Source: Gekko japonicus
Taxonomy: Eukaryota
Length of the DNA stretch: 54,065 nt
Assembly: GCF_001447785.1 (NCBI RefSeq)
Contig: NW_015165302.1
Location: 186,001 to 240,065 of the forward strand
Direction: 5' to 3'
A program made the position numbers and the translations under genes. The notes beneath the pieces are model-generated. The model saw only the letters and a program-made list of their open reading frames with translations, was not told where the DNA came from and did not search any database. Positions 4,061 to 51,649 of this stretch are shown here, in pieces (within the stretch, counting starts at the first letter, position 1; every line of letters starts with the position of its first letter).

Positions 4061-6920
4061 TCCTGGCGGATCTCGTGCTCTCGCCCCTTTCGGTTTCCTC
4101 TGAACTAAAGACACCAGATCTGTTGAGGCTGATCCGGCTACGCAGTCAAAAACTCCAGGGAAAGGGTTTGTGTGTGTGTGTCATTAGCAGGGGCCAGACT
4201 TCAGGAGAGAGATTCCTGTACGGTTTTTACATCCCCCCGCTAAACATAACCCTAAGATCGATTCCCTTATCCCCCCCCCAAAAAAATAAAAACCCCCACA
4301 AAGCTTCCGAAGTGTAGACCGCTGTTTGGCGCAGTGCGACGGGGCGAGGAACGGTCTCCCCTCCTTCATGTCCTGGAATTGCCTTTAGCTAAAGTGAGGC
4401 TCTCTGCTTGGCCTCTTTGCCCGGTTTTTGCAGATTTAGGGGAGGAGGAAGCGATTAGGCTTGGGGGGGGGGGGCGGGGGAATAAACCAGGCGCTGGGGC
4501 GCTGGGGCCGAACCTCAAATCGCGGTGGATTTGTATCCAACACCCCCCCCTTTCCCCCTTTCCCAGTGTTAACAAATGAATCCTGATGCCCGCAGCCCTG
4601 AAGGGGTTTCTCCTAACTCTTCTGTTCTTCTGTTTCTCAGTGTCTCCCGGGCTTGCCTTTGGAGGGTCCCAAAAGAATTCGCCCCCCTCTCGATTTCTGG
4701 AGCGTCTTGGGTGTTGCAGGACGAGGGAGCTGTTCCAGCCCACTGAGCAACAGGGCCCTGCCACCACCCCCTGAAGCACTGACCCTGCTTGGCTGCAGAT
4801 CCATTGCTGGGGGGGGGGGAGGGGAACTGCTCCGGTCTCCTCACTCCTGCTAAACTTTCAACGTGTCTCTTTCGAGGAAGAACCGACGTCTCCGTAGAGA
4901 GACCCGCAGCCACGGTCGCATTCCCGTGTTTTGTGTTTCCTCCCCAACCTGCGAGATTGGAACGCCCGGCTCTGTTAACTGAGGAGCAAGTCCCGTTGGA
5001 GAGCAAAACCTTGGGACGCTGGTCGACATTTTGCTGGTCTGAGGCCGGCAGACGAAGTATTCTAAATGGAGAGTGGCATTATTTGGAAGGGCGATGGGGA
5101 TTTTCATTACCTCTCCCCCATCCCCATAGTGACACAGTTTGGGCCTCTGTCTGTACAGCCACCAATTCCAGAGGCCCCAAATCCCGTTGTCAATCAAAGG
5201 TCTCCTTTACAACCGAGCGATTTCTCCCAAGAATATTTCTAGTTCATATTATGGGATTCTCCTTTCTACTTAGGAACAAGGCTTCTGGCGATTTTAGAGG
5301 CTTCCACCTAAGGGGGACACGGGTCGGTTTCAATTGTCTGAAAAGGCCGCGTTGGAGGCATTCTAGAAAGGAGACCAGACCAGTTTCCAAAATTGAGGCT
5401 TTTAAGGGAATCGAGGCGTTCTCCGGCGGTGGCGCATTCGATTCATTGCGGTTTACTTAGATGCTACGATCTGTAGATGAATGTGTTGATTTCTCTCATT
5501 GTAAAGTACATGGATAAATGGTTTCCAGAGAATATATTTTTAAAAGTGGTCCACTTTTACTACACCTCCCCCCCCCCAATAAAAATCCGTGTTCACAGGA
5601 CTGGATATTAGATAATTCCCGATCATGTCTTTGTTCCGGTTACAATAGCTAGTCTGTTTGGAGCGCTTCAAAATGGCCTCGACCTGCGGGGCAGAAAGAC
5701 CCTCGGTGGCCTTAAGTCACCCCTGTTCTTCCAAATTTCGATATAACGATCGAAATATTTTGAATATATATATCTGGTTTTATAAATCTTTTAAAAATCT
5801 TGATATTACCAAATGACAACGACAGCTGAGCCTTCTGCATTGGTTGGTGGAGGATCCCTGGTCTTAGATCCTCCACGAATTGACCGCGGGGCGGTTTTTT
5901 GCCGCATTTATGCAAATTCCTGCGCCAAATTGTTTGCGTCTCCAGTTCTGCCGCAGTTCCGCTGCGCCTTGGTGTCCCCCGCCCTGGCGCTCCTAGCGGC
6001 ACTGCGATCCAAGGAAGGCGCTTCAGTTTGGTTTTTTTTTTGGGGGGGGGATGCAGCGGAATTATGAAAGAGCCTCGGAAATTAGACTGCTGCTGGTTCC
6101 CCCCAAAAAAAGGATTGTGTCTTTCAGCCCTAACAGAATGAGTGCATCACAGAAGAGACGACCTAGCTTTTCATTGAAAATGTAGGCCCCAGATTTTTAG
6201 TTCTTTCTCACAGGCATAACAATAATAATAAAATGTTAACCTGGTCTATTTCTAGATAAGGGCTAAGTTCTGTTTCTACTCCTGCAGTAAGGGGTTCTTG
6301 TCCTTCTCTTTCCATCTTCCCCTGCATGGTATCCTTACCCATACAGGAAGGGGAGCAAGAGGGAGGGGGACTGCTGGGCGCTGGGGGGGTGGGGGAGTAA
6401 ATATGGCAGAAACAGCATTGCCCCAACACTACTGGGGGGGGGGGTTGACAGTAGTCCCAGCCGTAGTCCCAGTCGGTCCTCCTTGCTAGGCCCTTTTAAT
6501 TGACCCCCCCCCCACTGAAATCAATAAAAAGGGCTCAGGTTTTGGCCCCCTTACGGAGAGTTTTACTAATACACTGGTAGGGGGGGCTGTGCCTACACAG
6601 GAGCGCTCTTCCTTGTTTTGAGAAGTCACTTCCTGGTCGTGTATGAAAAAAAAAAAAGAGTGTGCCAAAAGGCTCCTTCGCTCTTCCTCCTGGACCCTCC
6701 CCAGGCCTCCCTGGGCAGGAGCCAGCGAAAGTCTCCTTTGCCTGCGGTGTAATAGGAGGACCTCAGAGTGGTGGCTCTTTCAAAAAGAAGGCCGCCTTCT
6801 CGGTTGGTGCATGAAAACAGCAGCCGTTTTAAGGTCAAGATGGGCAGCCGTGTTAGTCTGTCCGTAGCGGTAGAAAAGAGGAAGGGTCCAGTAGCACCTT
6901 AAAGAGTAATAAAAATATTT

Positions 6921-7013
6921 CCAGGTAAGCGTATTTGAAAAAGTGTGCTTGGCACAGGAAAGCTCATACCTTGAATAAACCTTCGTTGGTCTTGAAGGTG
7001 CCACTGGACTCTC
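6921..7013 (+). mobile_element. Second PLE fragment nested in the left arm
   Basis: Flanked by the 9-bp direct repeat aaaatattt (6912-6920, 7014-7022); removing it restores the arm; carries a degenerate hammerhead motif; a related sequence occurs at 50941-51028. Confidence 0.7.
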
Positions 7014-7076
7014 AAAATATTTTGATAGGGTATCGGCGTTCCTGAGTCACTGCTCACTTCTTCAGATACAGATGAT

Positions 7077-7116
7077 GAATCTGAAGAAGTGAGCGGTGAC
7101 TCACGAAAGCTCATAT
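7077..7116 (+). ncRNA. Minimal type-I hammerhead ribozyme motif (PLE-associated)
   Basis: CTGAAGA (7081-7087), extra A, stem II GTGAG/CTCAC (7089-7104), GAAA (7105-7108), palindromic AGCT stem III, predicted cleavage after C7112; stem I weak (gaat/atat). Confidence 0.7.
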
Positions 7117-7515
7117 ACCCCACCAAGAATGTCTGGTTAGTCTTTTAAGGAGCTACTGGGCTGTTACTCTTTTCTACTGCTATCCGTTTTAAGGTCCGTC
7201 TCAGCCACACTCAAGTAGCCTCTTGAGCTAGAAGTTTATTGAATTATAAGACCGGTTTGAGAAGCCATCTTCTCAGTGTTGCCGGGAATGAAAAGAACCC
7301 TGGAGAAGGTAAAATGAAAGAGAGAGTTACCGGGTGGAGTGGGAGGGACAATTGTGTGGGGAAACTCGTCTGCTCAGTCCCCCTCACTGTAGGGCTCAGA
7401 GCCACTGAATCATCCTTCAGGATCCAGTCCCGAGAATACTTGCCTGGGAGAAAGCCCCGTTGAATAAAATGGGGTTTAACCAGGCCTAGGACTGCAAGCG
7501 AATTGCACTCAAGAC

Positions 7516-7721
7516 CAGTGTTCCCTCTAAGATGAGTTAGTGTGAGCAAGCTCACAGTTCTTTAGCCTCCGGCTCACACATTTTTGTCTTAGCTCAGGAA
7601 GGATGGCTCCAGAGCAAAGTAACTGATGCAGTAGCCAAATCGCTCGCTCACAACTTTAATGCCAGTAGGTCACAAAGTAGAATTTTTGCTCACAGGACTC
7701 TACAGCTTAGAGGGAACACTG
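7516..7721 (-). mobile_element. hAT-like MITE, copy 2
   Basis: TIRs cagtgttccctctaag / cttagagggaacactg; perfect 8-bp TSD ctcaagac (7508-7515, 7722-7729), the TSD length typical of the hAT superfamily. Confidence 0.92.
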
Positions 7722-7894
7722 CTCAAGACTGCCTGTAAAGCCATGGAAGAGAATCCGCTCATGTCTCTGTCTTTTGTAAGGAAAAAGATGCCTTCCCTTA
7801 TTTGCACAAGGTGGTCACAATCCAGCAGAGAATTAGACACCCTTGGTTAAAGTCCCTTGAAGTACATTTACCTCTCCCTTTCCTACAATGCTGT

Positions 7895-7991
7895 CCTTCA
7901 CCCATTAATTTCTTGCAATATTTGCAGAAGCAATAAAAAAACCCTTCACCCATTAATTTCTTGCAATATTTGAAGAAGCAATTAAAAAAAC
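7895..7991. repeat. 48-bp tandem duplication
   Basis: ccttcacccattaatttcttgcaatatttg(c/a)agaagcaat.. starts at 7895 and again at 7943. Confidence 0.9.
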
Positions 7992-8064
7992 AGCTCCGTT
8001 TCTGCTTTAAGCCTTTATTCATGATTCCAGGATTTGGAGCTGTAGTTAACCTATAAACTCCCAG

Positions 8065-50822: not shown

Positions 50823-50940
50823 GAGAGTGCCCTGAGAGTGGGTGGAAAGTGGATTATTTAGGGTGTGCGAGGGCAGCCTGAATCTCTCCTGGCACACTTA
50901 CCTTGATTGAATGACCCGTCCTCCGGGTGTTAGGCCCGAA

Positions 50941-51028
50941 AGAAGTGTGTGCCGCTCACAAAAGCTTATCCCCCAGAATTAAATTTTGTTGGTCTTAAAG
51001 GTGCCAGCTGGACTCGAACTTTGTTCTG
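50941..51028 (+). mobile_element. Penelope-like fragment with a decayed hammerhead
   Basis: gaagtgtg...cacaaaagcttat...ttgttggtcttaaaggtgcca.ctggactc matches the nested fragment at 6931-7013; a further scrap lies at ~51200-51282. Confidence 0.6.
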
Positions 51029-51649
51029 ATCCGAAAGAAGTTCATCCGTGTTCAGTGGGCCTCATTCCAGGGGAAACCAGCACAAGACCGCAGCTTTGCT
51101 ACTTCCGCGCACTCTCTCCGATCAGTCGCAGGCACCGGTCCGGGAGCCCTTCAGGGACCAGAGTTCCAGGGTGGAAGTGTCGGAAGTCACGGCTCCCTTG
51201 ACAGCCGAGGAGTTTTGACTCTGGAGAGTTTAAACCCCTCCCCCCCCAAATCTTGCTGGTCTCTAAGCTGCTGCTGGACTCGTCTTTTTGAGTAAGTCAG
51301 CAGAGTATTAAGAGACTGAGTCCATGGTGTGTTTTAAAATATACAAGTTTACTATAAACCTAACATGGGAAAAAGGTACACAGGATATAAAAATAACAAA
51401 GAGCTACATCCTTGCAGCTAAAAGGTAAAACGGGAAGAGACGAAGAACAAAGAACGGGAGGAGAAGCCAATATGCTAAATACTTTACACCTTGGTTTCCA
51501 ATCAGACTAGCAAATTAGCTCCAAAGTTCCTGGGCATCCTATTGTCTAAACAGATTGGTTACAAACAAACATGTGACTTAACAAACATTATTAACCCTGT
51601 AAATACTGAAGTGTTTTGACTTGTAACACCCAACACCCCTTCTCAAGTT

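What the first reader, a model, noticed from the sequence alone, without database searches (positions are those of the whole stretch)
6824..7196. Hammerhead ribozyme motifs in a palindromic Penelope-derived insert inside HoxD
Three minimal hammerhead units lie within 200 bp. Plus 7077-7116 has an intact core (CUGAAGA-A-GUGAG/CUCAC-GAAA-GC-UC) but a weak stem I. Plus 6931-6969 has an intact GUAU/AUAC stem I and GAAAGCUC but a mutated UUGAAAA box. Minus 7030-7069 has an intact CUGAAGA and stem I but a mutated GAAC/CG. PLEs are known to carry minimal hammerheads whose palindromic stem III (AGCU) works as a dimer. Nesting has put two plus-strand units in tandem with complementary defects, so a cis-dimer is conceivable. 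Plus is antisense to Hox, so such a module would cut a lncRNA running from the ~4-kb promoter toward Hoxd8. Activity is unproven.
Basis: partly seen in the sequence, partly recalled or inferred. Interest (0 to 1): 0.8.

Follow-up and report, generated by a model that had tools for sequence, protein, structure and literature searches.

The report
Decayed Penelope-type insert with hammerhead relics
A 347-bp leftover of a Penelope-like jumping gene lies 3 kb downstream of Hoxd8; its three small hammerhead-ribozyme motifs are real, but only one is intact, it would be locked into a long hairpin, and nothing shows it is transcribed, so it is an ordinary repeat copy.

Summary
An exact 13-nt target-site duplication (6824-6836 / 7184-7196) bounds a 347-bp insert made of three homologous units, each a hammerhead followed by a spacer and a tail.

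- **U2** (plus, core 7081-7112) matches the published Penelope-type minimal hammerhead in its core, helix II and helix III. It is the only match in 54 kb (0.13 expected by chance), but its stem I has only 2 base pairs.
- **U1** (plus, 6931-6969) carries the U3/A8 core covariant known from natural elements, and also an unreported G10.1·G11.1 mismatch.
- **Um** (minus, 7069-7030) is dead (C15.1, C16.1, G17).

The layout is the described signature of Penelope-like insertion: two inverted 5'-truncated arms, a 28-nt tail on one side only, and one duplication.

The functional reading is not supported.

- In a plus-strand RNA the intact core pairs with the antisense arm (minimum free energy -90 kcal/mol).
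- The proposed cis-dimer costs about 60 kcal/mol and does not pair the good core with a good stem I.
- Three RNA-seq runs give zero depth on the unique flanks and no read ends at C7112 or C6965. Tissues are unknown and there was no positive control.
- Rfam finds no hammerhead, but it does not model this minimal form.

The scan has already noted 46 Penelope/hammerhead sites in this same genome. This is a known kind of element and of low interest.

The parts
6824..6836 (.). Left copy of the 13-nt target-site duplication CCGTTTTAAGGTC
   Evidence: Exact 13/13 direct repeat at the borders of repeat homology (family D3). About 0.01 such repeats are expected by chance in 1.1 kb (my estimate).
7184..7196 (.). 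Right copy of the target-site duplication
   Evidence: family D3
6837..7183 (.). Whole 347-bp composite insert
7071..7183 (+). Unit U2: hammerhead 7077-7116 (core 7081-7112, predicted cut after C7112), a 31-nt spacer, and a short-form tail ending at 7183
   Evidence: Only descriptor match in the window. Alignments.
7030..7075 (-). Unit Um, 5' part: dead hammerhead (7069-7030) with G11.1, C15.1, C16.1 and G17
   Evidence: Sequence; alignment A1.
6837..6930 (-). Unit Um, 3' part: spacer plus long-form tail. It is contiguous with 7030-7075 once U1 is removed.
   Evidence: Alignment A1 shows a 103-column gap exactly where U1 lies. Reads from other family copies skip 129-139 nt between about 6905 and 7039-7045 (table 5).
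6837..6864 (-). One-sided 28-nt 'tail' extension, present on the Um arm and absent from the U2 arm
   Evidence: alignment: U2 stops at ...GCTAT while Um continues for 27-28 nt. Compare the 30-40 bp one-sided tail of Penelope-like elements and the two reverse-transcription start sites.
6931..7029 (+). Unit U1, nested inside Um: hammerhead 6931-6969 (U3/A8, G10.1·G11.1), spacer, short-form tail. GTAT lies at both borders.
   Evidence: Other copies have C at 6957 (position 11.1) (table 3).
7031..7115 (.). Head-to-head palindrome of the Um and U2 hammerheads: 40-nt arms, 85% complementary, 5-nt gap
   Evidence: pair I1. It dominates the predicted minimum-free-energy structures of both strands.
50933..51030 (+). 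Fourth, decayed copy of the same family (G12A, altered first box)
   Evidence: blastn, sequence, nhmmer E=5e-25.
51210..51286 (+). Fragment that aligns to model positions 16-88 of the unit; only its tail part resembles the family clearly (weak match)
   Evidence: nhmmer E=9e-4, model positions 16-88; blastn matched only 51248-51281 to the tail region.

Best explanation
The insert is a non-coding relic of Penelope-type retrotransposition in a lizard-type genome. It lies in the Hoxd8-Hoxd4 spacer, about 3.2 kb downstream of the Hoxd8 homeobox.

One integration event, marked by one 13-bp target-site duplication, joined two heavily 5'-truncated element ends head to head:
- Um on the minus strand, with the long-form end.
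- U2 on the plus strand, with the end 28 nt shorter.

This is what is expected if both cleaved target strands primed reverse transcription, each at one of two internal start sites. That mechanism is inferred from published work on the green anole element PAc. The two arms came from different template RNAs, because their spacers are unrelated. A third unit of another subfamily, U1, lies inside Um.

The hammerhead motifs were inherited from the parent elements, where they sit 70-100 nt from the element's 3' end. At this locus they most likely do nothing:
- One is dead.
- One has a broken G10.1-C11.1 pair.
- The intact one has a 2-bp stem I, and in any transcript that also contains the opposite arm it is sequestered in a 40-bp hairpin.
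For: - **Borders and layout:** duplication and inverted arms; unit alignments and the nesting of U1.
- **Family copies elsewhere:** reads from other genomic copies lack U1 and carry variable spacers (tables 5 and 5c).
- **Match to the published motif:** the architecture fits the Penelope-type minimal hammerhead, including the bulged nucleotide, G10.1-C11.1, the palindromic 15.2-16.2 and the U3-A8 variant (PMC4209133).
- **Match to the published insertion signature:** an inverted 5'-truncated copy plus a one-sided tail is the described Penelope-like signature (PMC8557442). Cleavage and extension of both strands and two reverse-transcription starts that define the tail come from PMC11167929. The PAc hammerhead has the same design, CUGAGGA-U-helix II-GAAA-CG-UC.
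- **Folding:** minimum free energy is -161 kcal/mol for the plus insert RNA and -90.2 for 6900-7130. Enforcing the U2 hammerhead gives -57.9 and enforcing the cis-dimer gives -29.5. The helix II pair probability is 6e-17, and only 0.07 even for U2 alone.
- **Expression:** RNA depth is zero on the unique flanks in X21-X23, and no molecule ends lie at the cut sites.
- **Commonness:** 46 notes of the same kind exist in this genome, several with 13-bp duplications.
Against: - No element carrying reverse transcriptase and the same termini could be fetched. No Repbase or Dfam comparison was possible. The family shares no 7-8-mers with the one consensus available, PAc.
- The RNA runs were subsampled (3-12%), their tissues are unknown, and HoxD expression was not checked as a positive control.
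- Run X4, of unknown library type, holds low-depth contigs over 7131-7508.
- Thermodynamic folding ignores co-transcriptional kinetics and protein chaperones.
- The U3-A8 pairing in U1 and the fully intact U2 core could in principle reflect retained function.
Confidence: 0.85

Rival explanations
1. The units are not truncated autonomous Penelope-like elements. They are full-length copies of a short non-autonomous, retrozyme-like family (hammerhead + spacer + tail, about 100-140 nt) mobilised in trans by Penelope-like enzymes.
For: - The three units in the insert (U1, U2, Um) begin within a few nucleotides of the 5' strand of stem I. Where the 50.9-kb copy begins could not be judged, because the model does not extend upstream.
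- The spacer is hypervariable while the hammerhead and tail are conserved (table 5c).
- A preprint reports reptile non-LTR retrozymes averaging 176 bp that derive from Penelope pseudo-LTRs.
- The family is abundant in RNA-seq reads.
Against: - U2 and Um share one truncation point because they form a single head-to-head junction, so there are only two independent 5' ends.
- At least one expressed copy has different sequence directly upstream of CUGAAGA (table 7: 98 reads at 7081).
- There is no direct tandem array here and no evidence of circular RNA.
Confidence: 0.3
2. The tandem plus-strand pair U1 and U2, or U2 dimerising in trans, is an active ribozyme module. It cleaves a plus-strand, Hox-antisense lncRNA between Hoxd4 and Hoxd8.
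For: - The U2 core is fully intact.
- U1 carries the U3-A8 covariant found in natural elements, and compensated changes of the C3-G8 pair partly keep activity (shown for C3G/G8C).
- The AGCU palindromes of U1 and U2 can pair.
- Minimal hammerheads do cleave weakly as dimers in vitro.
Against: - The hammerhead fold is 32-60 kcal/mol less stable than the hairpin with the antisense arm, which is transcribed first on the plus strand.
- The dimer geometry does not complement the defects. The U1 core has the G10.1·G11.1 mismatch, and U2's stem I stays weak.
- No RNA is seen on the flanks and no molecule ends at the cut sites.
- Even intact minimal hammerheads of these elements are poorly active, and no RNA-seq ends were seen at the PAc cut site.
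Confidence: 0.03
3. The insert is a fold-back DNA transposon or MITE that happens to contain hammerhead-like sequences.
For: - The overall layout is palindromic (pairs I1-I3).
- A genuine hAT-like MITE lies 330 bp away.
Against: - The inverted repeats do not reach the termini symmetrically: one side has 28 nt more.
- A 13-bp duplication is unusual for cut-and-paste transposon families (from general knowledge).
- The arms have unrelated spacers.
- Single, non-inverted copies exist, for example at 50933-51030.
Confidence: 0.03

Closest known systems
Minimal hammerhead ribozymes of metazoan Penelope-like elements (Cervera & de la Pena 2014, PMC4209133)
   Same: - CUGANGA box.
- One unpaired nucleotide between A9 and G10.1.
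- G10.1-C11.1 closing a helix II that is longer than the canonical 4 bp (5 bp here; the paper describes 6-8).
- GAAA followed directly by a 2-nt palindromic 15.2/16.2 (AGCU) with no loop 3.
- Cleavage site UC and a 4-bp helix I.
- Motifs occurring in opposite strands 100-700 bp apart.
- The U3-A8 covariant.
- Reported in turtles and snakes.
   Different: Only one of the three local copies keeps helix II and the full core, and that copy has a 2-bp helix I. No activity data exist. Rfam does not model this form.
Poseidon_Ac (PAc) of Anolis carolinensis and its insertion mechanism (Frangieh et al. 2024, PMC11167929)
   Same: - The hammerhead has the same design and lies roughly 100 nt upstream of the genomic 3' end.
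- Two alternative 3' ends about 30 nt apart form the 'tail'.
- Both target strands can prime cDNA synthesis, which explains inverted arms inside one duplication.
   Different: There is no detectable sequence similarity to the PAc consensus. Here only about 110-140-nt ends were inserted, and the two arms derive from different templates.
Vertebrate non-LTR retrozymes (bioRxiv 10.64898/2026.07.22.740005)
   Same: Short non-coding units with type-I hammerheads, related to Penelope pseudo-LTRs, present in reptiles, mostly in intergenic DNA.
   Different: Retrozymes are defined by direct tandem arrays that can yield circular RNA. Here the two plus-strand units are separated by an inverted unit and belong to different subfamilies.

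Membership tests
Penelope-type minimal hammerhead (min-HHR) | C3-U4-G5-A6-N7-G8-A9 box, or the U3...A8 covariant | tested here: met
   U2 has CUGAAGA (7081-7087). Um has CUGAAGA. U1 has UUGAAAA, which is U3/A8.
Penelope-type minimal hammerhead (min-HHR) | Unpaired nucleotide between A9 and G10.1 | tested here: met
   It is an A in all three units and in the 50.9-kb copy.
Penelope-type minimal hammerhead (min-HHR) | G10.1-C11.1 pair closing a helix II of at least 4 bp | tested here: inconclusive
   Met in U2 (GUGAG/CUCAC, 5 bp). Not met in U1 or Um, which have G·G. Other family copies carry C at 6957 (table 3).
Penelope-type minimal hammerhead (min-HHR) | G12-A13-A14-A15.1, a palindromic 15.2/16.2 without loop 3, then U16.1-H17 | tested here: inconclusive
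   GAAAGCUC is present in U2 and U1. Um has GAACGCCG, with C15.1, C16.1 and G17, so it is dead.
Penelope-type minimal hammerhead (min-HHR) | Helix I of 4-5 bp | tested here: inconclusive
   U1 and Um have GUAU/AUAC (4 bp). U2 has only 2 consecutive pairs.
Penelope-type minimal hammerhead (min-HHR) | Mg2+-dependent self-cleavage, as a dimer | not testable with these tools
   Only thermodynamic prediction was possible, and it strongly disfavours the hammerhead fold.
Penelope-like element insertion | ORF with reverse transcriptase and GIY-YIG endonuclease | tested here: inconclusive
   The 347-bp insert has no coding capacity, and no ORF of 130 aa or more lies in or next to it (6-10 kb is empty; ORFs elsewhere were not scanned against Pfam). 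As a 5'-truncated remnant it would lack the ORF anyway. The parent element could not be fetched.
Penelope-like element insertion | Inverted 5'-truncated copy adjacent head to head, within one target-site duplication | tested here: met
   Um and U2 meet at about 7070-7076. The 13-nt duplication flanks the composite, matching the description read.
Penelope-like element insertion | Optional 30-40 bp tail at one end only | tested here: met
   28 nt (6837-6864) are present on the Um arm only. This is slightly shorter than the quoted range.
Penelope-like element insertion | Sequence homology to a curated Penelope-like consensus (Repbase/Dfam) | not testable with these tools
   Only PAc was available, and it shares no 7-8-mers with the units.
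Rfam hammerhead families (types I, II, III, HH9, HH10) | Covariance-model score | tested here: not met
   No hit at the gathering score or at E<=10 on 6600-7400. This is expected, because the minimal form has no helix III hairpin.
Non-LTR retrozyme | Direct tandem array of hammerhead units able to release unit-length or circular RNA | tested here: not met
   U1 and U2 are 146 nt apart in the same orientation, but they are separated by an inverted unit and are only 61% alike. No back-splice-type joints are specific to the locus.

The most novel reading that the evidence does not exclude
If the region is transcribed in embryonic HoxD-expressing tissue, either the intact U2 core (possibly paired through AGCU with U1) cleaves a Hox-antisense RNA, or the 40-bp and roughly 170-bp fold-backs act as a double-stranded RNA source for editing or small RNAs inside the HoxD cluster. 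That would be a domesticated transposon-derived RNA-processing site in a Hox cluster.
Probability: 0.03. Interest if true: 0.55.

Novelty: already known. Interest (0 to 1): 0.12.

Why it matters
It matters little as a ribozyme candidate. Penelope-type minimal hammerheads occur by the thousands in fish, amphibian and reptile genomes, and the scan has already noted dozens in this genome.

The locus does have modest value as a compact natural example of the Penelope-like insertion signature: two inverted arms from different templates, long and short 3' ends 28 nt apart, and one 13-bp duplication. That fits the recent in vitro model of priming on both strands with internal initiation. It also illustrates transposon invasion of a squamate HoxD cluster.

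Tried and rejected
- **Rfam:** cmscan of the whole window at the gathering score and of 6600-7400 at E<=10 gave no hammerhead. The only hits were spurious miRNA-like ones caused by the palindrome (mir-2209, 29.8 bits against a gathering score of 70).
- **Papers by sequence:** searching for 13-15-mers of the unit returned only unrelated primer matches.
- **PAc consensus:** searching the PAc supplement for family motifs found nothing shared.
- **Earlier findings by sequence:** blank.
- **Snap-back origin of the two arms:** rejected, because the spacers are unrelated while the hammerhead and tail are 85% alike.
- **Alternative hammerhead using GGUC as the cleavage site and the A/A' arms as helix I:** rejected by hand, because positions 15.2/16.2 do not pair.
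- **Target site resembling the element's own tail (11/12 nt):** a local-alignment shuffle test gave p about 0.09, not significant.
- **Parent element in the window:** no long ORF lies in or beside the insert; ORFs elsewhere in the window were listed but not scanned for reverse transcriptase or GIY-YIG.
- **Related species:** the orthologous site could not be examined.
Full report
**Observation**

- **U2 (plus 7077-7116)** reads GAAU|CUGAAGA|A|GUGAG-CGGUGA-CUCAC|GAA|AGCU|C|AUAU. All conserved hammerhead positions (C3-A9, G12-A14, A15.1, U16.1, C17) are present, with a G10.1-C11.1 pair and a predicted cut after C7112. Helix I has only two consecutive pairs.
- **U1 (plus 6931-6969)** reads GUAU|UUGAAAA|A|GUGUGC-UU-GGCACAG|GAA|AGCU|C|AUAC. 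Helix I has 4 bp and GAAAGCUC is intact.
- **Um (minus 7069-7030)** reads GUAU|CUGAAGA|A|GUGAG-CAGUGA-CUCAG|GAAC|GC|CG|AUAC. With C15.1, C16.1 and G17 it cannot be a hammerhead.

The stated interval 6824-7196 runs exactly from one copy of a perfect 13-nt direct repeat, CCGTTTTAAGGTC, to the other.

**Is it more than chance?**

I wrote an RNAmotif-style descriptor. It requires CUGANGA or UUGANAA, an optional bulge, a helix II of at least 4 bp, GAAA, a 0-6-nt palindrome, and UH.

- It matches only 7081-7112 in the whole 54-kb window on both strands.
- Across 300 dinucleotide-preserving shuffles the mean is 0.13 matches per window, and 0.01 with the same architecture.
- The three units are homologous to each other and to a fourth decayed copy at 50933-51030 (nhmmer E about 1e-25).

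The motifs are therefore family-derived, not chance. Rfam gives no hammerhead hit at the gathering score or at E<=10 in 6600-7400. Its hammerhead models require a helix III hairpin, so this blank says nothing about the minimal form. The miRNA-like hits only reflect the palindrome.

**Anatomy**

The alignments resolve the 347-bp insert (6837-7183) into units of the form hammerhead, about 30-nt spacer, then a tail containing ...TCTTWAAGGTGCYACTGGAC....

- **U2** occupies 7071-7183 on the plus strand.
- **Um** lies on the minus strand. Its hammerhead is at 7075-7030, and its spacer and tail are at 6930-6837.
- **U1** (6931-7029, plus) interrupts Um. GTAT is present at both borders of U1.

RNA-seq reads and contigs from other genomic copies independently support this. 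They run from about 6905 to 7039-7045, skipping 129-139 nt, with about 30 variable letters in between (tables 5 and 5c). Typical copies therefore lack U1 and have hypervariable spacers.

Um and U2 meet head to head at about 7070-7076. Um's 3' end abuts the left duplication and U2's 3' end abuts the right one. Um extends 27-28 nt further (6837-6864) than U2 does.

The two arms are 85% alike in the hammerhead and 85% alike in the tail. Their spacers are unrelated, so they were copied from different template RNAs, not by snap-back. U1 resembles the 50.9-kb copy most closely (69%), which suggests a different subfamily.

**Context**

Five homeoboxes lie on the minus strand:

| Position | Paralogue group |
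|---|---|
| 10618-10391 | 8 |
| 19518-19291 | 9 |
| 25415-25188 | 10 |
| 37584-37357 | 11 |
| 47260-47033 | 12 |

Assignment to HoxD rather than HoxC rests on my recollection of diagnostic residues (SRFQ in group 8, ARILN in group 9). I did not test it with a search.

**What it is**

The motif design is the one Cervera and de la Pena defined for metazoan Penelope-like elements (PMC4209133):

- an unpaired nucleotide after A9;
- a conserved G10.1-C11.1 pair;
- a helix II longer than the canonical 4 bp and a short helix I;
- a palindromic 15.2/16.2 in place of helix III;
- pairs of motifs on opposite strands 100-700 bp apart;
- presence in reptiles.

That paper also reports a natural U3-A8 covariant, which is exactly U1's 'mutated' box.

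The insertion layout is the described Penelope-like signature: strong 5' truncation, an inverted 5'-truncated copy adjacent at the 5' end, and a 30-40-bp tail at one end only (PMC8557442).

Frangieh et al. (PMC11167929) showed three things for the anole element PAc. The protein cleaves and extends both target strands. Reverse transcription starts at two adjacent internal sites. The tail is the sequence between those two sites. The PAc consensus has a hammerhead of the same design roughly 100 nt upstream of those start sites.

Here the two arms end 71 nt and about 98 nt after their cut sites, a difference of 27-28 nt. I therefore infer one integration event in which each target strand primed cDNA synthesis on a different family RNA. 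One used the outer start site and the other used the inner one, and the two short cDNAs were joined in the middle.

Direct homology to a reverse-transcriptase-bearing parent could not be tested. PAc shares no 7-8-mers with the units, and no eukaryotic repeat library is available here. A retrozyme-like non-autonomous family mobilised by Penelope-like enzymes remains a live alternative for the family's identity.

**Does it work as a ribozyme here?**

*Geometry.* In a double hammerhead each core (5' strand of helix I, CUGANGA, helix II, GAA, 15.x) acts on the other unit's 16.x-H17-helix I 3' strand.

- The intact U2 core keeps its own weak 5' strand, GAAU. On U1's AUAC this gives 2 bp, an A·A mismatch, then 1 bp.
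- The good GUAU strand belongs to the U1 core, which has the G10.1·G11.1 mismatch.

The defects therefore do not complement each other.

*Thermodynamics.*

| RNA or constraint | Predicted free energy (kcal/mol) |
|---|---|
| Plus-strand insert RNA, minimum free energy | -161 |
| 6900-7130, minimum free energy | -90.2 |
| 6900-7130 with the U2 monomer hammerhead enforced | -57.9 |
| 6900-7130 with the nested U1/U2 cis-dimer enforced | -29.5 |

- In the minimum-free-energy structures U2's CUGAAGA box pairs with UCUUCAG of the antisense arm, which is transcribed first on the plus strand.
- The ensemble probability of U2's helix II is 6e-17.
- Even U2 alone (7071-7183) forms helix II with probability 0.07, because GUGAGC pairs with GCUCAU.

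*Published activity.* Intact minimal hammerheads of these elements cleave poorly and only as artificial dimers. No RNA-seq ends were found at the PAc cut site.

**Expression**

Three RNA-seq raw-read runs of the same species were laid on 6000-8000 (X21-X23, 1.4-1.7 Gb read from each).

- Depth is zero over all unique flanks (6067-6803, 7206-7473, 7742-8000).
- The reads on the insert are partial, 95-99% alike, and continue into unlike sequence (share 0.84-0.86), so they come from other family copies.
- No excess of molecule ends lies at 7112/7113 or 6965/6966.
- Run X4, whose library type is unknown, holds contigs over 7131-7333 and 7358-7508 at depth about 3.

These results argue against transcription in those samples but are not decisive. 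The tissues are unknown, only 3-12% of each run was read, and I had no second call to check Hoxd8 as a positive control.

**Comparison and verdict**

This is a known kind of object. The scan itself holds 46 notes on Penelope-type hammerheads in this same genome, several with inverted arms, tails and 13-bp duplications. One follow-up note describes the genome as lizard-type. I did not check those notes themselves.

- The 'Penelope-derived palindromic insert' reading is supported by structure.
- The cis-dimer and lncRNA-cutting idea is not supported.

**Unexplained details**

- U1's insertion point coincides, within 0-4 nt, with Um's predicted cut site, and GTAT lies on both sides of U1.
- The target site resembles the element's own tail end in 11 of 12 nt, which is not significant (p about 0.09).

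Noticed in passing
window 7516-7721 (duplication 7508-7515 / 7722-7729): A roughly 206-bp MITE with 16-nt terminal inverted repeats (CAGTGTTCCCTCTAAG / CTTAGAGGGAACACTG) and an 8-bp target-site duplication, CTCAAGAC, which looks hAT-like. It belongs to a very abundant family: RNA-seq depth is 230-570 per orientation from other copies, and summed contig depth in X4 reaches about 486,000.
   Followed up: partly
window 6931-6934 and 7030-7033: The nested unit U1 is bordered by GTAT on both sides. Its insertion point in Um falls 0-4 nt after Um's predicted hammerhead cut site. This could be a 4-bp duplication from a later insertion, or a template switch at a ribozyme-cut RNA end. It is unresolved.
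   Followed up: partly
window 6820-6831 vs 6844-6855: The target site GCAGCCGTTTTA resembles the end of the element's own tail, GCAGCCGTGTTA (11/12). This recalls the reported dependence of the Penelope endonuclease on the tail sequence, but a shuffle test gives only p about 0.09.
   Followed up: yes
window 50933-51030 and 51210-51286: Two further decayed fragments of the same family lie beyond Hoxd12. One has a dead hammerhead (G12A, altered first box). The other is a weaker match (nhmmer E=9e-4) whose clear resemblance is to the tail.
   Followed up: partly
window 7081 (reads of run X23): 98 reads from one expressed copy elsewhere in the genome carry ...CCCAGTAGCAC directly upstream of CTGAAGA. 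That is a reverse-complemented tail motif fused to a hammerhead at a CT(G/T)AA(A)GA microhomology, and it suggests that inverted junctions of this family form at microhomologies (table 7).
   Followed up: no
window 7131-7508 (run X4): Low-depth (about 3) locus-specific contigs are present in a small run of unknown library type, while the left flank has none. This could be weak transcription, or an enrichment library such as ATAC or ChIP (table 8).
   Followed up: no
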